From Prasinococcaceae sp. CCMP 1430 (taxonomy: Eukaryota > Plantae > Prasinodermophyta): DNA of 64,000 bases. The stretch lies in assembly GCA_013416795.1 (NCBI GenBank), contig RQSC01000005.1, positions 264,733-328,732 on the forward strand, given 5' to 3'. Positions within the stretch are counted from its first letter, which is position 1. Each line of letters begins with the position of its first letter. Both the position numbers and the translations under genes were made by a program. Below the pieces are notes generated by a model, which was not told the DNA's origin, did not search any database, and saw only the letters and a list, made by a program, of their open reading frames with translations. Shown here one piece after another: positions 37,307 through 47,354 of the stretch.

Positions 37307-38618
37307 ATGCTCGCGCTCGACGACATCAATGCTGACAGCGGCGGCGAGAGCGATGAGATCACGGGGGAAAGGTCGGTTGTGAAGCCGGCGGAGGAGGCGC
37401 CGCTCGGGGAGCTCTCGGACGAGCACGAGCGAGCGCAGCTGTGCGCGCGCTTGCGTGCCGGCGGGTACGCAGTGCTGCGCCGACCTGCTGCTGCAGGTGA
37501 GGAGCGTGCGCGCGCATGCGCTCGCGCGGGCCGTCGCCCGTTCACTGACAGCCGAGGGCATTCGCCGACCTGAGCGGGCGCACACACTCGTGCACACGCC
37601 CGCAGCGTCTGCAGTGCGCGCGCGCGAGAGAGTGGGGAAAATGTTGCAGGCGGCGCCACGCGAGTTGCTGGCACGCTTTCACGGAGCAGGCCCAGGGCCC
37701 GGGCAAAAACACGGCTACATGGATTTCTCCGAGGAGGGCTTCGAGGTCTTCGAGGGTGCGTGGACGTGCGCGCACCCGCGCGCCTCCGCCACGCCTGCCG
37801 AATACAGATTGTCTGAACGCCCGTCGCTATCACTGACGCGCCTGCTCGAATCCGCGCATTGAGCCCTCTCTCGCGCACATTTCCTGCCGCGCGCTCCCGT
37901 ACGTTCAGTGCGCGACCACTTTGATGGCCGTTTCCAGTGGCCAAACGTTCCCGGTCTGCGCGACGCGGTCGAGGGCGCGCGCGCGGCGCTGCGTGCCGTC
38001 GCTCTCGAGACGCTCGTGGCGGTGCTTGTGAACGAGCGCGTCGACCCGTCAGACGCGGTGCTCGCGCGGCTGCTCGACAGGCCAGTCCCGCCCACATCGA
38101 CAGGGAAGGCGACTCCGAGTGAGCTGGCTGAATGCAGCTCGTCAGGAATGCGCATGCTGCGCTACGACGGCAACAGTGGTGCCGGTCCCCGCAATGGCTC
38201 ACCACACACCGACAACACGTTGATCACAGCCGCGCCGCGCGCGGACGTGCCCGCACTGCAGCTCGCCAAGAGGGCTGAGGGGGGTCGCGAGAGCGTGTGG
38301 GAAGCTGTAGAAGCGCAGATGGGTCCCGACGATGTGCTGGTGTTCGCAGGTGACGCGCTCTGCGCGCTTACGCGCGGACGCTACGCCGCTGGCCTGCACC
38401 GTGTGCCGCCCGGCGAATACGCCGGCAAGTGGCGAATGTCGACGCCGTACTTTTTGAGGGCGCGGCCAGGGGCCGAGCTGGGCATGCTCACGCAGGACGA
38501 ATTGGAACGAAACGTGCGCAATTGCCGGCGCTCACGGCCATGGATGCGCAGCCGCGCGGACGCGGAGTGGTACGCGCAAAGGATCGAACTCCTGCGAAGC
38601 ACCGAGTCCCAGCACTGA
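37307..38618 (+). CDS. 2-oxoglutarate/Fe(II)-dependent dioxygenase (IPNS-like); about 3 exons
   Basis: MLRY, PHTD (HxD), VFAGDAL, GLHRV and RMSTPYF (RxS). Confidence 0.85.
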
Positions 38619-38733
38619 CCCACACAAACACACACCGAGCAAGGCCATCAGGAGTAATAGGCAGTCGACGGGTAGGACAGGTTGTCGTATCTGCGTCGTG
38701 TGCGCTTACGTGTGCCCACGCGCCGCGGCTGCA

Positions 38734-40332
38734 TCAAGCGCGCGCGCGCTTTCGCGCGGCGCCGTCAGCGGCAGCGGCGCCGTCGACAGCAACGAGCGCA
38801 GAGTGCTGCCCGCCGAAGCTCACGCAGGTGACGCGCTTGCCCGCCATCCGCTTGCCACCCTTGACTTGGTACGGCGTGATCTCGTCATCATCGGCGTTAG
38901 GCGCGCTCTTCGGCTTGCCAAGCTGCATGCTCGTGTTTGAGCCCCAGGTCCAGCAGCGACCGTCCCTCGAGATCGCGGCACTCGTGGACAGGCCGCACGC
39001 GACAGCCACGACCCCGTCGATACCCGGCACCACGCCAGGCGCCCACACGGGGTCGTCCGACTCGGGGTCCACGTCAGTGCGCCCCAGCCTGCCGTACGTC
39101 GGCCTGCCCATGGCGAGCACCTGGCCCTGGCTTGTAACCGCCAGCGTGTGGTGCTCGCCACCGTGCAGCGTGCACACCCCTTTGCCGCTCAGCGCGTCCA
39201 CCCGCACGGGCTCGTACTTCTCGCGCCCCTCTTGCTGCACGCCCTTGCCGTCTCCGAGCTCGATCCCCAGCTGCGAGTAGTTGTTCAGCCCGAAAGCAAG
39301 CACGTCCTCGCCACACACGACGAAAGAGCAGAACGCGCCTGCAGCGATCGCCGTCGGCCTCCTGCCACCGAGAGGCACCACCGTAGGGGTCAGCGTGACC
39401 GGGAGCAGGCCCTTCACTTGGTCCTTGTCCTGCGTGTCCGAGTCCGCCTGGCTCACGCGGCCGAGGCGGCCTTTCTCCGGGCAGCCCCACGACAGCACCT
39501 CGCCGCCCGCGGTCAATGCGAGCACGTGATCGGCGCCGCTGGCGACGTCGACCACCCGGTCCGTGGCGGGGCTGGCCTTAGGGCCCGCAGTCACGATGGG
39601 GGCCTTCGCCACCTTGGTACCTGGAACGAAGCCCATCGGCCCGGACGAGTTGCGATACGTGCCCCAGCCATACACGCAGCCGTCGGCGCAAAGCGCGATC
39701 GAGTGAGAGTCGCCCGCAGTGACCTTGAGCACAGTGCTGCCGGAGGCGATCGGCACCTCCCCCGGGGTCTCCTCCGAGCCCTCGACGTCCTTGTTGGCCA
39801 CGCGGCCCAGCGCGCCCTCATCGTTGATGCCCCAAGAGTACACCACACCAGCAGAGGTTAGCGCCAGCGTGTGCATGCCACCGCACACCATCTGCGTGAC
39901 ACCGACCTCGGCGAGGGCGCCGACAGTGCGCGGCAGGTACGACTCATCGACGTCATCACCAAGGCCAAGGATGCCAAAATCACCGGTGCCGAAGGTCATC
40001 GCCTGACCCTCCGCGCCGATCTTTGCTCCCGCGCCCTCGTCCGCAGCACCTGCTACGCCGTCCACCGGCGCCTTCGCCTCGAGGGCGACGTCGGCGTACT
40101 CGGCACGCAGCTCGCGCATGTAGCGCATGTAGTCGCGGCATCCCGCCTCCCACGAATCGTGCGCTGTGTCGGCCCCACGCTGCTGCGCGCTCACCCATGC
40201 GAAGAATTGCGCATTGAGCGATCCCACCGCGCGCTTGAGCGCCGCTGCGCGCCGCGCTTCCCTGTCATCGCCGGCGGCCGCGCCGGCCGCCGCCGCCGCC
40301 GCCTTGCGTTTCGCGCCGCGAGTGCCAAACAT
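38734..40332 (-). CDS. RCC1: RCC1 (Ran guanine-nucleotide exchange factor) with an N-terminal Nup50/Nup2-like helical motif
   Basis: YSWGINDEGALGR, VTAGDSHSIAL, WGTYRNSSG, YGRLG and VSFGGQHS typify RanGEF RCC1; N-terminal LNAQFFAWV...RDYMRYM. Confidence 0.88.
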   Translation of the reverse strand: MFGTRGAKRKAAAAAAGAAAGDDREARRAAALKRAVGSLNAQFFAWVSAQQRGADTAHDSWEAGCRDYMRYMRELRAEYADVALEAKAPVDGVAGAADEGAGAKIGAEGQAMTFGTGDFGILGLGDDVDESYLPRTVGALAEVGVTQMVCGGMHTLALTSAGVVYSWGINDEGALGRVANKDVEGSEETPGEVPIASGSTVLKVTAGDSHSIALCADGCVYGWGTYRNSSGPMGFVPGTKVAKAPIVTAGPKASPATDRVVDVASGADHVLALTAGGEVLSWGCPEKGRLGRVSQADSDTQDKDQVKGLLPVTLTPTVVPLGGRRPTAIAAGAFCSFVVCGEDVLAFGLNNYSQLGIELGDGKGVQQEGREKYEPVRVDALSGKGVCTLHGGEHHTLAVTSQGQVLAMGRPTYGRLGRTDVDPESDDPVWAPGVVPGIDGVVAVACGLSTSAAISRDGRCWTWGSNTSMQLGKPKSAPNADDDEITPYQVKGGKRMAGKRVTCVSFGGQHSALVAVDGAAAADGAARKRARA

Positions 40333-40559
40333 CGCGGCGCCCGCCCGCCCTCGTGCGCGCGCGCGCGCGCGCACACCCTCGCCCGGGGAGGACGCCTGGG
40401 GGAGGAGCGATAGAAGGCGCGGGGGGACGATCGCACGGCCGAACAATCCGCCGCGCGTCGGGCGCCAGCGGGCGCTCCCGGCCCCTGGCCTGCCCGGCGG
40501 CCGCCGCGGGCTCGCCCAGGCACGCGCGCGCGCGCGGCGAGGGAGATTTCGGACTCTTT

Positions 40560-40760
40560 TTCCCCTCCTTTTTTTTTTGTGTCCCAACCGCAGCGCAACG
40601 TCTCTTGATGATGGCATCCACCGGGACCGGGGCGAAAACAAAATCAAATCAAAATCAAAATCTGTACGCACAATACCATCATGATGGTAATTAACCCTAA
40701 TCCTAGTACCTAACCCCAACCCTGATATGGACCCTATCGCTTTCAAACGCATGGGATTCC
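40560..40760. promoter_or_regulatory. AT-rich bidirectional promoter island between RCC1 and NUP188, with AAAATC repeats and a telo-box-like AACCCTAA
   Basis: AAAATCAAATCAAAATCAAAATC near 40639 and TAACCCTAATCCTAGTACCTAACCCCAACCCT near 40692, between divergent starts. Confidence 0.5.
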
Positions 40761-40967
40761 GGGGGCAATTTTTGGCGGGCGCGCGGGCGGCCGCCGCGCC
40801 ACACCGCGGGCCGCGGGGGGGCGTGCGCGCTCGCGCGCGCGCAAGCGCAGCGCGCCTCGCGAGCCGCCGCGCGGGGCACCGGCGCGAGGCCTTGGTCCCT
40901 CCCCCATCCTCCTCCCTCGCTCGCTCTCTCGTGCTTGTGCCCGCGCGTGCGCGCGTGAGGGTAGGCC

Positions 40968-43900
40968 ATGGCGGGCGTTTTCGGCTTCGGCGCCACACCG
41001 ACGGGAAAGGAGACGCCGGCGCCGCTGTTTGGCGGAGCGGCGACACCGCCTGCTGGAGGTGCAGGCGCAGCACCGCTGTTCGGTGCGGCAACGGCAACCC
41101 CTGCAGCGGCGACGACGACGACGCCCAGCGGCGCTGGCGGGGCAGGCGCAGCGCCGCTGTTCGGTGCGGCTTCGGCGGCCCAAGCTGGTCCTGCGGCTGC
41201 GCAAGCTTCAAAGGCTCCTGCCACTGTGCAAGCTGCGTCGATCAGCTTTGGTGGTGCTCAGGCAACAGGCACTGGCCCTAGCAAAGAGCCGGCCGCCGCT
41301 ACCCCCGCTGCGGCTGCTGCGGCCAACAACACCGCCGCTTCCACCCAGCCGCTGGCCGCGGCCGCTGCAAACACTGCCGCCGCGGCGCCCGCGGCTGGGA
41401 CAAACGCACTCGCCGTTCCTGCTGGGTCTGTGGGGCAGTCGGGCGCGCTGTATGATGCAACTAGTCTCTGGTGGGATCCGTTCCACCGGCTCGCAGTTGC
41501 GCTCGAGGAGGCCGTGCGGGGGCTTCGCGATGAGGTGTCTCTGCGCGCTGAGCTCGATCGCTTCGCTCGATTCCTCGCCGATCCGGCCTCTGCGTTCAAG
41601 CCGCCCTCCTCGGAGGCGCGCGCTGCGATCGCAACGACGGGCAAGTTTGGCATCAACGGCAAGGCGAAGGCGGTGGCACCAGGGCTCCGCGACGCAGCGC
41701 TGGCTGTTTCGGAGCATCTCGAGCTCAATGAGGTGCAGGCGTACGTACTGGTCGTGAGATGCTACCGCAATGGGGCCGATGGCCTCCCGAAGAGCGATCC
41801 AAGCATGCCAGAGGAATGCGCTCGTGTACCAACCCGTTGCGAGAGTTACTACTACACCGAGCGCAGGGATCTGCTCTTCGCGATATTCAACGTGTTGCAG
41901 CTGGCAAAGATGCGGACTGACATGACTGAGGCTGCGGCTGACGTTGCGGAGGACGAGGGGCGTGACGGTGACGCCCACCACAGCGCCGCGGCTGAAAATC
42001 TGGCGGCCTGCGAGGCATGCGCAGACGCCGTCGCGAAGGCGCGCTCTGCGGGCCTCGAGGCGAACTTGGCGTCCGCGCTGAAGGCGGCGCTGGGCGGACC
42101 CCCGGCGGCGCGCGCAATGGCGGCCATGGCGGGGAGTCTCCTCTCGCGTGGTGTTACGGCTGGCGTGAACGCAGCTGCTGACTGGGCTCGTGCTGCACTG
42201 CGCGAGCAGTGCCAGTTGCTTGAGATTGTGTATGCCGTTGGGCTCACGGGCCAGGACAATCTGCAGGAGATGCTCGACACGCTCGGCGCCCACGTTTTTG
42301 GAGTAGATACAAACATCGAGAGCCGTACGAGCCAAACTGCCGCTGCGGCCGCGCTCGCAGCCGCTGAAGGCGAGGCGCGCGCGTACACCGAACGCCGTGA
42401 AGCGCTGGCTGCGTGCCTGTCGTTGCAGCTTATGGGCTTTGACTCTCTCATATCTCGCATCGGCGACGAGCAGACGGGGACCTGGGAGCGAAATGTGCTT
42501 GCAGGCGCTGGTGCTGCCAACACCTGCCGTGCTGTCACCGAGGTTGTAGACATGATCGCCGAGGCAGTCTGCGACGCGGCCGTCCGCACTGGGGCGCACG
42601 CCCCCCCCCAAGCACGCGCAGTGGTCTGTTTGGGATGGGCGTGTGTGCTGCACCTGATCGAGCAGCTACCGGAGCCATTGGCGGGCCCGTTGCCAAGTCT
42701 TGAGAAGTGCGTAGAGGCTGCAACACGAGGCAGAGCGCTCGAGTGGGTGACGTCGGCATTCTCGGCTGGTGGCGCCCTGAGCACCGGCGCTGCTGGTGTT
42801 GGGGCGGGAGCGCACGAGCATTGCATGTCCGAGGATGCCCGCTGGATGATGCGCAGCGTGCTGTCGGCACACTTGGCGTCGTTTGTGATTCCAGCACCGA
42901 TCGGCGCGTTGCTCCAGCCTTGGTCTGAAATCTCGCGGACTACTGCTGCGCTGGCTGCTGTGTTGGACGGCGCTGTCGAGATTTCAGAGGACATCATGGT
43001 GGACAATAACTCTGCACCCATCAATCAACCCATCAACGCCCTGCTGCAGCAAGCACTCCGACCCTTCCCAGAAGACCCGCGGCCGATCTGCACCCTCCTT
43101 CGCTCGATGTGTGCTTCGGAGCGCTGTGCGATGGACGTCGTCTTGTATCTCGATCGCGCGCCGACACTGGCTTTGCGACATCATGTGTCCGACGGCACCA
43201 TCACCGTATCGGCCGCAGGCGGAACCGCCACTTTACTTGAGACGGTTGATGCACAGCTGGCGCCGGGAATGGTCATGCGCTTGGAGGCTCAATCGCAAGG
43301 TACCCTTCTGGGCGTCCCAGACTCAAACTCAGGTGGCAGCGCGATCGTCGCATGGAACTACCCCCAGCGGGGCATTGCTGTGCTTCTTGCCCGCCTGGCT
43401 GGTGTGATCGCTGCCATCGTCGAGGCCCGCCGAGGTGGGCATACACCGGCGGGGGAGACCGTGGAAAGTGCCTTGGTGATGGTGGACCTGCTCGAGCGCG
43501 CCGCGGGCCACAATATGGTGGTTGCTGGCCAGCTTGTGGACTGTGCGAACGCTTGCAACGTGCCTTTCGCGGCCATGATTGCATCGCTGGTGGCAACAAC
43601 TTGCGAAAGCCTGTCGACTCCCTTCCCGGGCTGCCTCGAGCTGCTCAGCGCAGCTCTCCGGCTAGCGAGTGCGCTGTCCGAGGTCGGCCCATCGAACGCG
43701 TTCGCTGCACTGACGGCCATGCCCGGCCTGATGACTCAGCAGACCGGGACGGCGCCCACCCCTCCGGTGGTGCTCATGTCCCTTGCTGCACTCGAGAGAT
43801 CCATGGGTGGGAAGTACCTCGGCACAATCGCATTTCTTGATGCCAGTACCAATGCTATGCTTAATGGTCACCGCGTCGCAACGGATGGGAGCGCGCATGG

Positions 43901-46900
43901 GGATGCGTACGCCCCTGCCATGGGCTGGGCTGCATTTGCAAACCACGTATTGAGTGCATACGCGCGCTGGCCGCACGGGCGCCGCGCGACTCGCTGGAAG
44001 GTGGCCGCCGCAGCCGTGAGATGCCTGCGCGTGGCCCTGCAAGTCGCGCCCGGTAGGGGCGACGAACTTTCGTCAGCGGCGCAGCAAATGCTGCATCCAG
44101 ATGGTGCTGCAGGGGCCGCACTGGCGGAGCTGCTCTCCGCCAAGGGAGTCGAGACCGCCGCTGAGCACGCGCTCGGCGATGGCGCTGGAGTCGCGTTCGA
44201 GGCGACCATTTGTGAGGCCCTCAAGCTGTGGACTGCACTTGCGAATGCCGCTCCTGAGGGGGCAGTCGTCGCCCCTGCCGGCCATGCTTCTGAGCGCGCT
44301 TTCGCTGCGTGCGTTGAGCATATCGCCGGGCGTTCATACGAACTCAAGGCCGCGGCGGCAAGTGCCCTCGTGAGGCTCGCGGAGCGCGCGCCTCAACGCG
44401 CAGCGCTGGCGTGCGACGCCACCAAACTCGCCGGGGAGCTGAGCGAAGCAGTCAAGGGGGGTCGCTCAACGCCACGCGCGCGGCTGTCGGCCTTTGTGCT
44501 CGAAGGGCTCCTGGACGCACGCTCCCCGCTCGCCTACAAACTTCTCTCCCCGCCTGCTGGGCCGCGCACGGCGCTGGATGCAACGGAGAGCGATGTCAAG
44601 GCTGCCAATGCTGACGCAGCTGAGGCTGCCACCTTGGCGAGGGCCGCGAGGCGAAGCGAAGCAGAGGCGCACGTGCTTCCGGCCGTGTGGGACGTTGCGC
44701 GAGGCGCTAGCGATGGTCGCGATCGCAATCTGCAGGCACGGATGCTGAGGATAGCCCTTCTATTGTGGCTCCAGGGTGACAGCAGCACTGGGGCCGCTCT
44801 GTGGATATCAAAGCAGGAGGGTGCGTGGGACAAGCTGATCGAGGCCGTCGGCCTCTCCGCGGCTTCTGCGGGCTCTCAAAACGATGTTGACAGCATTGAC
44901 GGGCGGCTGGCCGTAATGGAGGCTGCCGCTCTGCGCATTCTTGGCGCTGAGGCGGCACAGCGCCCCCTCGGTGCCAGGAATCCGACCGGGGTCCTTTCAC
45001 GCACGCTGGGCGCCTGGGGCGAAACAGGCGTCGGAAAGCTGCTCACTAGGTACCAGAGCCAGCAGCCCATTCTGGATGCCTGCGAGGCGCTGGCAACAGC
45101 TCGAAGCTGTGCGCGTTGCGTCGCGCACATGCTCGTTCCCAATGCCTTCGCCGCACGTGATGCTGGGTCGACAGGCGCGGGTCCCTCTATCCGCCCAGAC
45201 GTCGCCAAGGACCTGGTCGAGGCTGCTGAAGCGGCGTGCAAAGATGCCGGCGTCGCGCCAGGTCGCACTCGGGATTTGGCGTGCGCAGCGACTCGAGCAG
45301 CCCACGAGGGCGCTATTTTCATGGCGCAGTCGGACGTCGCCGCACGCTGGGGGTCTGAGGTTGCGGGCTACCTGAATGCGGCCAAGAGCGCGTCGCTCGA
45401 GCATGTCTTGTTGCGACCGCCGCGACGCAACGCACGTATCAGCCTCACGCCCGAAATGTACGTGTACGACATCGGGTGGCTTGAGGATGCTCTGAGGGCA
45501 TGTCACGTCTATTCTGCCGGAGCTGCGCTGGCGGAAGCTGCTAGCCTCGAGCCCGCAGAGGCGGACCGCGAGCTTGCCACGGCCGCCACCAAGGCAATCG
45601 AGGCCGCCGAAGCCGCAGGTCATGCGGCGTCGCTGGCGGACGCTCGCACGGACGCGCTCGGCGCAATGCGTCTGCTGGTGGCAGCCGCCTTGCCCATGAC
45701 TCGCTCCGGCATCGAGCCCTCCGTCGCGGACGCTGCGAACGCCTGGACGTGGGAAAAAGACGAAGCTCTTGCGCCGCTCGTGTTGCGGCAGGTGGCTGCT
45801 GCCAGCGAGGCCTGCGCCGCCGCCGCCAAGGACCCTGGGCCAATGCGGGACGCCCAGGCCATCGAGAACTCACACCTCGCCTCGCTCTTCGTGCGTGCAC
45901 TCAACAAGGAGCTGCTGTCGTCGAAGGTGTCTGCAGCGTGTGTGGGGGCGTTTGCGACAGCACTTGGCCCGCCCGAGGCGCCTGCACGTGCGCTCGATGC
46001 CCTCGCTGCCGCCACATCATCGGCTCTTGGCGTCTCACCTGCTCCGTCGCTGGAAGCTTCTGTGCTCGCGGAGTCGCTGCGCCAGCGCAGCGTCGCCAAG
46101 AGCGCAACGGACGGGGCTGGCGGCACTGGTCGCACGTTGAGCCCCGCGCTAGCTTCGTGCGTGAGCGCCATGCTTGGCGGCGGCGGTGGCGGCTCCTTGC
46201 TCGCCCTGGGGCTCGAACAGCGAAGGGGCGAGATGGGTGCTGCTCTGTCGCCGGCCCAGCGCATGCTGCGCATCAGCCGTGCGGTCGCCGTCGCGGCGTC
46301 GCGCACGATTGAAGCGGGTGACCCCTCCGCGACGGCAGCCTGGTTCATGTCCCCTGCGTGGAGCGAAGCGCTCTCGGCGGCCGCCGCGCTCGTCGTTGAG
46401 CACGCTGCTGTGGACGACGCACTCCTGGAGGAGGCCACAAGCTTCGCCGCCGCCGTTGCTGGTGGTGTAGCGTCGAGCCTGCGCATATCAGGGTGGCTCC
46501 AACGCCAGCACTACCAGGACAGTGCGTCTGCGCAGGAGTCGAAGGCAGCACACGAGGCGACGTGCAGGGCGTGCAGGCTCCTCGCAGCGATGGCGCCGTT
46601 CGCCGGACGCTGGGCGCTCCGCGCCCCAGAGGCGCTCAAGCTGGTGTCGACCGAGGCGGTTGCGCTTGTGGCTGACGCCGGCGCGGCGCCAATGCCAGCC
46701 CAATTCGAGGTGGGCACCACGGTGTGGGCGGCGCGAAAGGACGGGTGGATTGAGGCATCGGTCGTGCAGGTGGGGTCGGACAATCGCCCCCCGACCTACA
46801 CGATGCGTGCCACTGGTGCGGCGGGCGACGAGTTCGAAGTTGTGGCGTGTGAGGCGCGCGCGCGCGTGTACGGCCCCAACGGTGCCGTGGTGACCCCACA

Positions 46901-47354
46901 GGTGGCCAGCGCGGCCAGTGCGACCGCGCTGGCTGAGCATTGGCGTAGGGCGGCGGCCGCTGCCGATTCTGCCGTGGGCGCTGCGTGCGTGTTCCTGGCG
47001 CGGCTAGCCGCGCGTAGTGCCAAGCACAGGGCCTTCAGCGATGTGCTTGGCGCTGCACCCAAACCCGACGCACTCGAGCGGGTCGCGCGCGCTCTGAGTG
47101 CGCGCGTTGTGCTGCTGGCAGGAGGGGGCGGAACGCAAGGGGCAGCGCTCATGCCCAGCGCAACCGCAGTCGCTCGCTCGCTCGAGGCCGCCGTGGCTCT
47201 CGTGATTCCACACTCGCGGGAGGGCACTGTCGGAAGGAGTCGTTCGAGCACGATTCGCGACGCCGTCGAGGCAGCCGCCAAGGCACTGGAGGGTGCCGGT
47301 GGAGAGGGGGGACAGCTCCCCGCGCAGCTGCGAGCGACGGTAGATGCGCTCTGA
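40968..47354 (+). CDS. NUP188: Nucleoporin Nup188-like scaffold (2128 aa, apparently intronless) with N-terminal FG repeats
   Basis: SLWWDPF, FKPPSSEAR, ALAVSEHLELNEVQAYVLV and YYYTERRDLL match the plant Nup188 N-terminus; the length fits. Confidence 0.8.
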   Translation: MAGVFGFGATPTGKETPAPLFGGAATPPAGGAGAAPLFGAATATPAAATTTTPSGAGGAGAAPLFGAASAAQAGPAAAQASKAPATVQAASISFGGAQATGTGPSKEPAAATPAAAAAANNTAASTQPLAAAAANTAAAAPAAGTNALAVPAGSVGQSGALYDATSLWWDPFHRLAVALEEAVRGLRDEVSLRAELDRFARFLADPASAFKPPSSEARAAIATTGKFGINGKAKAVAPGLRDAALAVSEHLELNEVQAYVLVVRCYRNGADGLPKSDPSMPEECARVPTRCESYYYTERRDLLFAIFNVLQLAKMRTDMTEAAADVAEDEGRDGDAHHSAAAENLAACEACADAVAKARSAGLEANLASALKAALGGPPAARAMAAMAGSLLSRGVTAGVNAAADWARAALREQCQLLEIVYAVGLTGQDNLQEMLDTLGAHVFGVDTNIESRTSQTAAAAALAAAEGEARAYTERREALAACLSLQLMGFDSLISRIGDEQTGTWERNVLAGAGAANTCRAVTEVVDMIAEAVCDAAVRTGAHAPPQARAVVCLGWACVLHLIEQLPEPLAGPLPSLEKCVEAATRGRALEWVTSAFSAGGALSTGAAGVGAGAHEHCMSEDARWMMRSVLSAHLASFVIPAPIGALLQPWSEISRTTAALAAVLDGAVEISEDIMVDNNSAPINQPINALLQQALRPFPEDPRPICTLLRSMCASERCAMDVVLYLDRAPTLALRHHVSDGTITVSAAGGTATLLETVDAQLAPGMVMRLEAQSQGTLLGVPDSNSGGSAIVAWNYPQRGIAVLLARLAGVIAAIVEARRGGHTPAGETVESALVMVDLLERAAGHNMVVAGQLVDCANACNVPFAAMIASLVATTCESLSTPFPGCLELLSAALRLASALSEVGPSNAFAALTAMPGLMTQQTGTAPTPPVVLMSLAALERSMGGKYLGTIAFLDASTNAMLNGHRVATDGSAHGDAYAPAMGWAAFANHVLSAYARWPHGRRATRWKVAAAAVRCLRVALQVAPGRGDELSSAAQQMLHPDGAAGAALAELLSAKGVETAAEHALGDGAGVAFEATICEALKLWTALANAAPEGAVVAPAGHASERAFAACVEHIAGRSYELKAAAASALVRLAERAPQRAALACDATKLAGELSEAVKGGRSTPRARLSAFVLEGLLDARSPLAYKLLSPPAGPRTALDATESDVKAANADAAEAATLARAARRSEAEAHVLPAVWDVARGASDGRDRNLQARMLRIALLLWLQGDSSTGAALWISKQEGAWDKLIEAVGLSAASAGSQNDVDSIDGRLAVMEAAALRILGAEAAQRPLGARNPTGVLSRTLGAWGETGVGKLLTRYQSQQPILDACEALATARSCARCVAHMLVPNAFAARDAGSTGAGPSIRPDVAKDLVEAAEAACKDAGVAPGRTRDLACAATRAAHEGAIFMAQSDVAARWGSEVAGYLNAAKSASLEHVLLRPPRRNARISLTPEMYVYDIGWLEDALRACHVYSAGAALAEAASLEPAEADRELATAATKAIEAAEAAGHAASLADARTDALGAMRLLVAAALPMTRSGIEPSVADAANAWTWEKDEALAPLVLRQVAAASEACAAAAKDPGPMRDAQAIENSHLASLFVRALNKELLSSKVSAACVGAFATALGPPEAPARALDALAAATSSALGVSPAPSLEASVLAESLRQRSVAKSATDGAGGTGRTLSPALASCVSAMLGGGGGGSLLALGLEQRRGEMGAALSPAQRMLRISRAVAVAASRTIEAGDPSATAAWFMSPAWSEALSAAAALVVEHAAVDDALLEEATSFAAAVAGGVASSLRISGWLQRQHYQDSASAQESKAAHEATCRACRLLAAMAPFAGRWALRAPEALKLVSTEAVALVADAGAAPMPAQFEVGTTVWAARKDGWIEASVVQVGSDNRPPTYTMRATGAAGDEFEVVACEARARVYGPNGAVVTPQVASAASATALAEHWRRAAAAADSAVGAACVFLARLAARSAKHRAFSDVLGAAPKPDALERVARALSARVVLLAGGGGTQGAALMPSATAVARSLEAAVALVIPHSREGTVGRSRSSTIRDAVEAAAKALEGAGGEGGQLPAQLRATVDAL

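What the first reader, a model, noticed from the sequence alone, without database searches (positions are those of the whole stretch)
38734..40332. RCC1 fused to the Nup50 motif reported to bind and activate RCC1
Seen: MFGTRGAKRKAA...LKRAVGSLNAQFFAWVSAQQRGADTAHDSWEAGCRDYMRYMRELRAEY (~40085-40245) in frame with a full RanGEF-type RCC1 propeller. Known, from recall: LN..[FV]..W[IV]...DY..Y[LM] is the conserved central motif of Nup50/Nup2 and of plant Nup50-like RanBD proteins, and vertebrate Nup50 uses this region to bind RCC1 and stimulate its GEF activity. Inference: a Rosetta-stone fusion giving a self-activating or pore-tethered RanGEF.
Basis: partly seen in the sequence, partly recalled or inferred. 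Interest (0 to 1): 0.88.

Follow-up and report, generated by a model that had tools for sequence, protein, structure and literature searches.

The report
RanGEF RCC1 carrying Nup50's pore-docking hairpin
This green alga's RCC1, the enzyme that loads Ran with GTP, carries at its front end the small two-helix module that the nucleoporin Nup50/Nup2 uses to dock on the nuclear-pore basket (not the piece of Nup50 that activates RCC1), and it lacks the arginine that normally anchors RCC1 to nucleosomes, so RanGTP may be made at the pore rather than on chromatin.

Summary
Window 38734-40332 (-) encodes one intron-free 532-aa protein: an N-terminal LN..F..W...W..DY..Y segment, a disordered linker and a complete RanGEF-type RCC1 propeller. 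RNA-derived contigs cover it as one piece.

The segment is truly Nup50-like. A profile of RCC1 N-termini finds RanBD proteins of Nup50 architecture at E down to about 1e-15 among 1.84 billion proteins. hhalign between the two classes gives E 6e-28. The predicted hairpin's three best Swiss-Prot structural matches are worm, human and fly Nup50, the human one at residues 149-214.

Holzer 2021 maps RCC1 binding and stimulation to Nup50 G25/F27 and K36/R38 in the N-terminal PF08911 region, which is not detectable here. The conserved central motif is the pore-localisation, Nup153/ELYS-binding element; yeast Nup2 has a Nup60-binding motif in the matching region.

The fusion defines one RCC1 clade: Prasinoderma, Chloropicon, Pycnococcus, Pyramimonas, Cymbomonas and a cryptophyte. 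That clade also lacks arginine at the columns of human R214 and R217, the nucleosome acidic-patch anchor, and usually has a C-terminal KRxR tail.

Best reading: a basket- or ELYS-tethered RanGEF. It is a new variant of a known kind, apparently undescribed. Localisation and binding are untested.

The parts
38734..40332 (-). Whole CDS, 532 aa plus stop. A single exon.
   Evidence: ORF and translation. RNA-derived contigs are colinear, without joints. An identical 532-aa protein is called on two TARA metagenome scaffolds.
40303..40320 (-). N-terminal basic cluster RGAKRK (aa 5-10), a candidate NLS or importin-alpha site.
   Evidence: Read from the sequence. M-x-KR-type N-termini occur both in RCC1s and in Nup50-type proteins, so the cluster does not point to either family.
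40069..40257 (-). Nup50/Nup2-type helical hairpin (profile match aa 26-88). Conserved residues are L39, N40, F43, W46, W61, D67, Y68 and Y71. Helices are about aa 23-52 and 62-78.
   Evidence: Profile search. hhalign E 6.2e-28 against RanBD-type hairpins. AF2 model pLDDT 88.9. Foldseek top hits are NPP-16, human NUP50 [149-214] and fly Nup50. All invariant and nearly invariant columns are present in the window protein.
40009..40098 (-). Ala/Gly/Glu-rich flexible linker (aa 79-108).
   Evidence: In the full-length AF2 model, aa 86-99 have pLDDT below 50 and the 10-residue blocks covering aa 81-100 average 56 and 41. Length and sequence are not conserved among orthologues.
38782..40008 (-). Seven-bladed RCC1 beta-propeller (aa 109-517) of the RanGEF type. 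It keeps GDSH (D208), GADH (D268), GGEHH and a beta-wedge-like YRNSSGPM (aa 226-233).
   Evidence: Pfam. Alignment to human RCC1. 38 columns invariant across 40 RCC1s are kept. pLDDT is mostly above 90.
39403..39456 (-). Loop aligned to the RCC1 'switchback' loop (aa 293-310, VSQADSDTQDKDQVKGLL). T300 and K303 stand where human RCC1 has R214 and R217. There is no arginine in the loop.
   Evidence: HMMER alignment to human RCC1. MAFFT columns over 120 RCC1s. Human R217 is the acidic-patch arginine anchor (PMC12448860).
38737..38757 (-). C-terminal basic tail ARKRARA (aa 526-532), a candidate NLS.
   Evidence: Read from the sequence. The tail is disordered in the model. A KRxR-type C-terminal tail is present in 9 of 14 hairpin-bearing RCC1s. 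It is also in 12 of 96 others, most of which look like N-terminally truncated members of the same clade.
40333..40967 (.). 635-bp intergenic region shared head-to-head with the 2128-aa ORF at 40968-47354 (+). It holds a GC-rich repeat at 40337-40385.
   Evidence: ORF map. Read depth is 0 at 40375-40445, and the tool reports a skipped repeat at 40337-40385.

Best explanation
The gene encodes the alga's canonical Ran guanine-nucleotide exchange factor, in a form that carries a localisation module borrowed from, or shared with, the nucleoporin Nup50/Nup2.

Shown here:
- aa 26-88 form a two-helix hairpin homologous to the conserved Nup50/Nup2 motif.
- A disordered linker of about 30 residues joins it to an intact RanGEF-type propeller.
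- The whole is one transcript-supported ORF.
- The architecture is conserved in one RCC1 clade spanning several green-algal classes and a cryptophyte.

Inferred: in vertebrates this motif is necessary and sufficient for pore localisation and for Nup153 and ELYS pull-down. In yeast, Nup2's N60BM lies in the corresponding region (the MAR domain that aligns with it) and directly binds a C-terminal helix of the basket protein Nup60. By transfer, the hairpin would dock RCC1 on the nuclear-basket FG-nucleoporin (Nup153/Nup60/Nup1-type) and/or on ELYS, so that Ran is loaded with GTP at the nucleoplasmic mouth of the pore and at pore-assembly sites.

In the same clade the switchback-loop arginines that anchor canonical RCC1 on the nucleosome acidic patch are absent. 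The long basic N-terminal tail is replaced by the hairpin, and an NLS-like KRxR tail sits at the C-terminus. This suggests the protein's anchor has partly or wholly shifted from chromatin to the pore. Nup50-type proteins with near-identical hairpins exist in related picoalgae, so RCC1 and Nup50 would share or compete for the same docking site.
For: Homology:
- The profile of 10 RCC1 N-termini finds land-plant and algal proteins of 350-530 aa with the motif at about aa 50-110 and a C-terminal RanBD, at E down to about 1e-15. Of 90 hits of at least 200 aa, 44 carry Pfam Ran_BP1, 4 RCC1 and 2 NUP50.
- P0341 has PF08911 (E 6e-7), the motif at aa 242-292 and a weak RanBD-like C-terminus (Pfam E 0.18, below threshold). 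It is hit at E 6.8e-8.
- hhalign between RCC1-type and RanBD-type hairpins gives probability 99.8% and E 6.2e-28.
- The AF2 hairpin has pLDDT 88.9. The three best Foldseek matches among 550,129 Swiss-Prot models are C. elegans NPP-16, human NUP50 [149-214] and Drosophila Nup50 [189-242]. AFDB clusters give NUP2/50/61-domain, RanBD1, Nup50 and nup61 entries.

Function of the motif:
- PMC8634129: the 46-aa region is required for NPC localisation and binds Nup153 and MEL28/ELYS; a D-to-Q change at position 177 abolishes pore binding.
- PMC8836807: Nup2 aa 83-136 is sufficient to bind Nup60 aa 505-539, and deleting it delocalises Nup2.
- Precedent for a RanGEF at the basket: yeast Prp20 binds Nup60, Nup2 and Nup1 directly (PMC2196189).

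Architecture: the linker has pLDDT below 50 between a confident hairpin and propeller.

Clade and correlated changes:
- The propeller tree puts all hairpin RCC1s in one clade (SH-aLRT 95).
- Arginine at the human R214 column is found in 82 of 91 other RCC1s and 1 of 29 in the clade. At the R217 column the counts are 49 of 91 and 0 of 29. R217 is the acidic-patch anchor (PMC12448860).
- C-terminal KRxR tails.

Transcript support.
Against: - No localisation, binding or activity data exist for any member of this clade. The function of the hairpin is transferred from vertebrates and yeast across a very large distance.
- The link to metazoan Nup50 rests on structure search with weak E-values (0.56-2.2) and on proteins of Nup50 architecture, not on a direct sequence alignment to vertebrate Nup50 or yeast Nup2.
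- The algal docking partner (a Nup153/Nup60/Nup136-type helix, or ELYS) was not identified.
- This genome's own Nup50 was not found.
- Loop alignments are uncertain. Some clade members have another Arg or Lys in the loop, so loss of nucleosome binding is only suggested.
- The three correlated changes arose in one clade and count as one evolutionary event, not three independent ones.
- Whether the hairpin packs on the propeller could not be read from the model output.
Confidence: 0.6

Rival explanations
1. Self-activating RanGEF. The fused Nup50 piece binds the protein's own propeller and stimulates nucleotide exchange in cis.
For: Nup50 does bind RCC1 and roughly doubles its GEF activity (PMC8634129). 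The hairpin sits on a flexible tether that could fold back. An environmental RCC1 fragment (P0330) carries, upstream of the hairpin, a weak PF08911-like segment with GxF and RxR (E 0.061). Fusions that include the true RCC1-binding element may therefore exist elsewhere.
Against: The RCC1-binding residues G25/F27 and K36/R38 lie in the N-terminal PF08911 region, and aa 1-114 suffice. The central motif was mapped to pore binding, and NPC-binding mutants still supported NPC assembly. The window protein shows no PF08911 match even at E<=10 on aa 1-110 and has no GxF..AS..R.R string.
Confidence: 0.07
2. The hairpin is homologous to Nup50's but serves another partner in this clade. It might bind chromatin-bound ELYS only, or importin/Ran-system proteins, or mediate dimerisation, with no stable residence at interphase pores.
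For: In Xenopus the same 46 residues pull down MEL28/ELYS as well as Nup153, and the two could not be separated. Nup50 and Nup2 are mobile and also act on chromatin. The D of the DY pair, nearly invariant in RanBD-type hairpins, varies in RCC1-type ones (D, E, Q, S). That hints at relaxed or altered specificity.
Against: Hairpins of the two protein classes are interleaved in the motif tree. They are most alike within related lineages, for example the window's AHDSWEAG against P0326's PHDSWEAG, and Chloropicon RCC1 against P0202. This pattern fits a shared partner. The window protein keeps every conserved position, including D67-Y68.
Confidence: 0.25
3. Chance resemblance, or an annotation or assembly artefact: a low-complexity N-terminal extension with no relation to Nup50, or one not part of the mRNA.
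For: Pfam gives no hit on the segment. The genome is 70% G+C, so long spurious ORFs are common.
Against: Profile E-values reach about 1e-24 among RCC1 fragments and about 1e-15 among RanBD proteins. hhalign gives E 6e-28. Scores are bimodal among RCC1s, 27-90 bits against below 1 bit. The fold is confident. RNA-derived contigs are colinear. The segment is conserved in named species.
Confidence: 0.02

Closest known systems
Canonical RCC1 / Prp20 / Pim1 RanGEF (human RCC1, PDB 1A12, 1I2M, 8UX1)
   Same: A seven-bladed propeller about 38% identical to animal RCC1 over aa 108-517 (E 3e-63). It keeps the residues invariant among 40 RCC1s, the GDSH/GADH/GGEHH motifs and a beta-wedge-like segment.
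   Different: The N-terminal basic tail is replaced by a Nup50-type hairpin. GRLGR stands in place of GQLGR. T300 and K303 stand at the positions of human R214 and R217 (the arginine anchor), in an acidic loop. There is a C-terminal KRxR tail.
Nup50 (vertebrates) / Nup2 (S. cerevisiae) / Nup61 / NPP-16 / plant Nup50-like RanBD proteins
   Same: They share the LN..F..W...W..DY..Y helical hairpin. In vertebrates this is the NPC-targeting, Nup153/ELYS-binding region (Xenopus aa 144-189). In yeast, Nup2's Nup60-binding motif (aa 83-136) lies within the MAR domain that aligns with that region.
   Different: There is no RanBD and no FG repeats. There is no detectable PF08911 N-terminal region, the importin-alpha- and RCC1-binding part. 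The hairpin is followed by a RanGEF propeller instead.
Non-covalent RCC1-basket contacts: Nup50-RCC1 (Holzer 2021), Prp20-Nup60/Nup2/Nup1 (Denning 2001), Nup2-Prp20 (Dilworth 2005)
   Same: All place the RanGEF at the nuclear basket or with Nup50/Nup2.
   Different: Those are interactions in trans through other surfaces. Here the basket-docking element itself is part of the RCC1 polypeptide.

Membership tests
RCC1 RanGEF (orthologue of human RCC1 / yeast Prp20) | Seven RCC1 repeats forming a full RLD propeller | tested here: met
   PF25390 E 3.9e-98 over aa 111-512 and PF00415 with 7 stretches. The AF2 propeller spans aa 109-517 with pLDDT mostly above 90.
RCC1 RanGEF (orthologue of human RCC1 / yeast Prp20) | Closest solved and named relatives are bona fide RCC1, not UVR8, HERC or RPGR-type RLDs | tested here: met
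   Human RCC1 chains score E about 1e-63, against UVR8 at 1e-37 and HERC at 1e-37. Named database hits are 'regulator of chromosome condensation'.
RCC1 RanGEF (orthologue of human RCC1 / yeast Prp20) | Residues on the Ran-binding face (human D128, D182, H304 region) and the beta-wedge | tested here: met
   D208, D268 and the GGEHH motif align with human D128, D182 and the GGQHH motif. YRNSSGPM aligns with the human wedge FRDNNGVI. The roles of these human residues come from my own knowledge of Renault et al. 2001, not from a tool.
RCC1 RanGEF (orthologue of human RCC1 / yeast Prp20) | Nucleosome acidic-patch arginine anchor in the switchback loop (human R217) | tested here: not met
   K303 aligns with R217 and T300 with R214, and there is no Arg in aa 293-310. 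The anchor's identity comes from PMC12448860. This feature concerns chromatin binding, not GEF membership.
RCC1 RanGEF (orthologue of human RCC1 / yeast Prp20) | Nucleotide-exchange activity on Ran | not testable with these tools
   Needs a MANT-GDP exchange assay.
Nup50/Nup2 family (whole-protein membership) | C-terminal Ran-binding domain (PF00638) | tested here: not met
   No Ran_BP1 hit; the C-terminal part is the propeller.
Nup50/Nup2 family (whole-protein membership) | N-terminal PF08911 region (importin-alpha binding, with the RCC1-binding GxF and KxR) | tested here: not met
   No PF08911 hit at E<=1 on the whole protein or at E<=10 on aa 1-110. PF08911 maps to the N-terminus of true Nup50-type proteins.
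Nup50/Nup2 family (whole-protein membership) | FG repeats | tested here: not met
   Only the N-terminal 'MFG'. A relative, P0247/P0376, does have GFGGFGGFG ahead of the hairpin.
Nup50/Nup2 pore-docking hairpin (domain-level membership) | Significant profile similarity to the motif in proteins of Nup50 architecture | tested here: met
   (hhalign E 6.2e-28).
Nup50/Nup2 pore-docking hairpin (domain-level membership) | Same predicted fold at the position of the mapped NPC-targeting region of metazoan Nup50 | tested here: met
   Foldseek ranks 1-3 are NPP-16 [9-77], human NUP50 [149-214] and fly Nup50 [189-242], with TM by query 0.69-0.75 and probability 0.82-0.97 but E 0.56-2.2. The mapped Xenopus region is aa 144-189.
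Nup50/Nup2 pore-docking hairpin (domain-level membership) | Binding to Nup153/Nup60-type basket nucleoporin or ELYS, and nuclear-rim localisation | not testable with these tools
   Needs pull-down and imaging.

The most novel reading that the evidence does not exclude
In a whole clade of RCC1s, found in early-diverging green algae and cryptophytes, the RanGEF has exchanged its nucleosome anchor for Nup50's basket-docking hairpin. It would then be, in effect, a resident or semi-resident nuclear-basket component. The RanGTP gradient in these cells would be generated at the pores, and at ELYS-marked pore-assembly sites, rather than on bulk chromatin. RCC1 and Nup50 would occupy the same docking helix as a paired RanGTP source and user. 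Relatives carrying FG repeats (P0247) or a PF08911-like RCC1-binding segment (P0330) ahead of the hairpin would be further steps towards a 'nucleoporin-RanGEF'.
Probability: 0.25. Interest if true: 0.82.

Novelty: new variant of a known kind. Interest (0 to 1): 0.68.

Why it matters
RCC1's position defines where RanGTP is made. The textbook picture is chromatin-bound RCC1. Contacts between RCC1 and basket nucleoporins (Nup50, Nup2, Nup60, Nup1) are known only as weak interactions in trans whose meaning is debated.

A conserved natural fusion of RCC1 to the basket-docking element of Nup50, together with loss of the nucleosome arginine anchor, would be a natural experiment. It would show that a pore-localised RanGEF can sustain a eukaryotic cell, and it would give a direct handle on what RanGTP production at the basket does. 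The handles are a small hairpin, defined point mutants and tractable picoalgae.

The work also shows that the Nup50/Nup2 docking hairpin is a widespread autonomous module. The profile found 316 cluster representatives, some with tandem copies. Pfam does not model it, which is why these fusions are annotated only as 'regulator of chromosome condensation'.

Tried and rejected
- Pfam scans of the whole protein, of aa 1-110, of aa 25-85 and of ten orthologous N-termini gave no NUP50 hit. This was rejected as evidence against homology once PF08911 was shown to map to the extreme N-terminus of true Nup50-type proteins.
- PDB sequence searches with the motif profiles A2 and A4 gave only chance hits at E 0.06 or worse. 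No solved structure contains this motif.
- The ESM Atlas feature search on aa 1-100 returned only RCC1 clusters.
- Two searches with the Prasinococcus Nup50-like protein P0289, whole and motif region only, were meant to find this genome's own Nup50 and named Nup50s. Both returned only the query.
- P0326/P0375 is a Nup50-type protein whose hairpin loop shares HDSWEAG with the window protein. Its contig has 60% G+C against 69% here, so it belongs to another organism.
- A tree of the 63-column hairpin alignment is too poorly resolved to say whether the RCC1 hairpins arose once or by repeated transfer from Nup50.
- The N-terminal M-x-KR element was considered as a second Nup50-derived piece. It was rejected as non-diagnostic because motif-less RCC1s also start that way.
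- A direct sequence alignment to vertebrate Nup50 or yeast Nup2 could not be made, because no tool returned those sequences. The human sequence I recall was not used as evidence.
- Literature searches found no description of an RCC1-Nup50-motif fusion.
Full report
**Observation**

The window is about 70% G+C, and the reading frame stays open upstream. Three things fix the start at 40332.
- Orthologues begin at or just before the same motif, and one relative also starts MFGT.
- A transcriptome contig covers 38763-40329 with no differences, gaps or joints.
- Metatranscriptome contigs reach 40336. Depth is zero at 40375-40445 in all four runs. It is also zero at 38600-38670 in all four, and only one run has any depth before 38742.

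The N-terminal segment and the propeller are therefore one unspliced message. The closest relative (70% identity) clusters with a Prasinoderma singulare protein. Together with the G+C content, this makes Prasinoderma coloniale the likely source.

**The propeller**

Pfam gives the RCC1-like domain at E 3.9e-98 over aa 111-512 and seven RCC1 repeats. The best solved relatives are human RCC1 chains (E about 3e-63, aa 108-517). They lie well ahead of UVR8, HERC and RPGR. The residues invariant in 40 RCC1s from algae to animals are kept. D208, D268 and GGEHH align with human D128, D182 and GGQHH. A wedge-like YRNSSGPM aligns with FRDNNGVI. This is the organism's canonical RanGEF.

**The N-terminal segment**

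Pfam finds nothing in it, but that says little. On true Nup50-type proteins, PF08911 maps to the extreme N-terminus (P0341 aa 22-64, P0343 aa 4-53), not to this motif.

The same LN..F..W...W..DY..Y segment precedes the propeller in RCC1s of these organisms:
- Chloropicon primus and C. roscoffensis
- Pyramimonas obovata
- Cymbomonas tetramitiformis
- Pycnococcus provasolii
- the cryptophyte Baffinella frigidus
- several unnamed marine picoeukaryotes, one of them with an intron after the motif

A 63-position profile of ten such N-termini was searched against 1.84 billion representative proteins. It gave 316 hits at E<=1e-3 and 90 at E<=1e-10. Apart from RCC1 fragments, the hits are land-plant and algal proteins of 350-530 aa. 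They carry the motif near residue 50-110, FG-rich middles and a C-terminal RanBD.

Of 90 hits of at least 200 aa, 44 carry Pfam Ran_BP1, 4 RCC1 and 2 NUP50. Sources name them 'RanBD1 domain-containing' or 'PH domain superfamily' proteins. P0341 shows the Nup50 layout and is hit at E 6.8e-8. It has PF08911 at the N-terminus (E 6e-7), the motif in the middle (aa 242-292) and a weak RanBD-like C-terminus (Pfam E 0.18, below threshold). Profile-profile comparison of 18 RCC1-type with 26 RanBD-type motifs gives probability 99.8% and E 6.2e-28.

**Link to animal and fungal Nup50/Nup2**

No tool returned vertebrate or yeast sequences, so this link was tested by structure. AlphaFold2 with a 122-sequence alignment folds aa 22-92 into a two-helix hairpin (pLDDT 88.9). 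Among 550,129 Swiss-Prot models the three best Foldseek matches are C. elegans NPP-16 [9-77], human NUP50 [149-214] and Drosophila Nup50 [189-242]. E-values are weak (0.56-2.2), as expected for 60 residues. Probabilities are 0.82-0.97 and TM by query is 0.69-0.75.

The human range coincides with the region that Holzer et al. mapped (Xenopus aa 144-189). The AFDB cluster library adds entries named NUP2/50/61-domain, RanBD1, Nup50 and nup61. No PDB chain contains the motif.

**What the motif does in Nup50**

Holzer et al. 2021 (PMC8634129) show the following.
- The conserved central 46 residues are required for pore localisation and bind Nup153 and MEL28/ELYS.
- A single D-to-Q difference at position 177 separates the pore-bound mouse paralogue from the non-pore one.
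- RCC1 binding and the roughly two-fold GEF stimulation belong to the N-terminal fragment aa 1-114/120.
- That activity is abolished by G25A/F27A or K36A/R38A, residues in the PF08911 region.

In yeast, Nup2 aa 83-136 (the Nup60-binding motif, N60BM) suffices to bind a C-terminal helix of Nup60. Deleting it releases Nup2 from pores (PMC8836807). It lies within the Nup2 MAR domain, which Holzer et al. align with Nup50 aa 144-189. The window protein has the docking hairpin but no detectable PF08911 segment.

**Anatomy and correlated changes**

In the full-length model the hairpin (helices 7-51 and 57-78, pLDDT 81-90) is separated from the propeller (aa 109-517). The segment between them includes aa 86-99 at pLDDT below 50. 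The hairpin thus looks like an autonomous module on a flexible tether.

Among the 120 nearest RCC1s the hairpin is bimodal: 14 score 27-90 bits and the other 106 score below 1 bit. A propeller-only tree puts all hairpin-bearing sequences in one clade (SH-aLRT 95). Six models of near-identical relatives that lack the N-terminus fall in the same clade. It is distinct from the core-chlorophyte and animal clades.

That clade has three further signatures.
- It has GRLGR instead of GQLGR (29 of 29).
- It has a C-terminal KRxR tail (9 of 14 full models), and its N-terminal tail is less basic.
- It lacks arginine in the switchback loop. At the column of human R214, 82 of 91 other RCC1s have Arg, against 1 of 29 in the clade. 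At the column of R217 the counts are 49 of 91 and 0 of 29.

Human R217 is the arginine anchor that inserts into the nucleosome acidic patch (PMC12448860). The window protein has T300 and K303 at these positions, in an acidic, arginine-free loop. These changes arose on one branch and are not independent. Loop alignments are also soft. Even so, they point the same way: away from the canonical chromatin anchor and towards the pore.

**Mechanism proposed**

The hairpin docks the RanGEF on the basket FG-nucleoporin (Nup153/Nup60/Nup1-type) and/or ELYS. The flexible linker lets the propeller load Ran with GTP at the nucleoplasmic exit of the pore. Basic clusters at both ends (aa 5-10 and 526-532) serve nuclear import.

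Yeast gives a precedent for a RanGEF at the basket: Prp20 binds Nup60, Nup2 and Nup1 directly (PMC2196189). Nup50-type proteins with very similar hairpins exist in related picoalgae. Examples are P0202 beside the Chloropicon RCC1s, and P0326 sharing HDSWEAG with the window protein. The two proteins may therefore use one docking site.

I put 0.95 on the homology of the hairpin and about 0.6 on basket or ELYS tethering as its function here.

**Limits**

- This genome's own Nup50 was not found.
- The docking partner in algae is unknown.
- Packing of the hairpin on the propeller could not be inspected.
- No direct sequence alignment to vertebrate or yeast proteins was possible.

**Novelty**

Full-text searches found no description of an RCC1 carrying this motif. 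Database names for the members are plain 'regulator of chromosome condensation'. I rate it a new variant of a known kind, of good interest to the nuclear-transport field and directly testable.

Noticed in passing
L001:98-574 (protein P0330, environmental contig of 631 bp): This RCC1 fragment carries a weak PF08911-like segment upstream of the hairpin (GNFNRASGSDIARRRIV; Pfam E 0.061). It includes the GxF and RxR positions that Holzer 2021 found necessary for RCC1 binding. If real, it would be a true Rosetta-stone fusion of RCC1 with Nup50's RCC1-binding element. The contig is short and low-coverage, and the ORF runs into a probable intron.
   Followed up: partly
Proteins P0247 / P0376 (environmental, ENA/MGnify): This RCC1 relative starts MFGT like the window protein. 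It then has FG repeats (SSGGFGGFGGFGSGGF) ahead of the hairpin and propeller, a more nucleoporin-like N-terminus.
   Followed up: no
window 40968-47354 (+): A 2128-aa ORF lies head-to-head with RCC1, 635 bp apart. Its N-terminus has PLFG/LFG repeats. Other notes of this scan call it Nup188, but Pfam gives no hit at E<=0.01, so that name is unverified.
   Followed up: partly
window 37908-38618 (+): A 236-aa 2OG-Fe(II) oxygenase (PF03171, E 3e-8) lies tail-to-tail with RCC1. The same neighbour follows the gene on two TARA metagenome scaffolds (L002, L003).
   Followed up: no
Proteins P0199, P0200 (Volvox-type), P0201 (Striga), P0229 (Picozoa), P0342: These proteins carry two tandem copies of the hairpin. 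P0229 has no RanBD and a weak F-box-like hit, below Pfam's threshold (E 0.0014). The hairpin seems to be a mobile module used beyond Nup50 and RCC1.
   Followed up: no
Pfam PF08911 (NUP50) against the hairpin: PF08911 models only the extreme N-terminus of Nup50. The conserved docking hairpin has no Pfam model and no PDB structure, although the profile found 316 cluster representatives.
   Followed up: yes
window 40337-40385: A GC-rich repeat lies just upstream of the start codon. RNA-derived contigs break there, and the read tool skipped it as a repeat.
   Followed up: no
Protein P0004 against P0183 (unnamed picoeukaryote): In this lineage the RCC1 hairpin is followed by what looks like an unspliced intron. 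Gene callers start the protein at an internal Met (445 aa) and lose the hairpin. Several 'motif-less' members of the clade (P0011-14, P0016-18) are probably truncated in the same way.
   Followed up: partly
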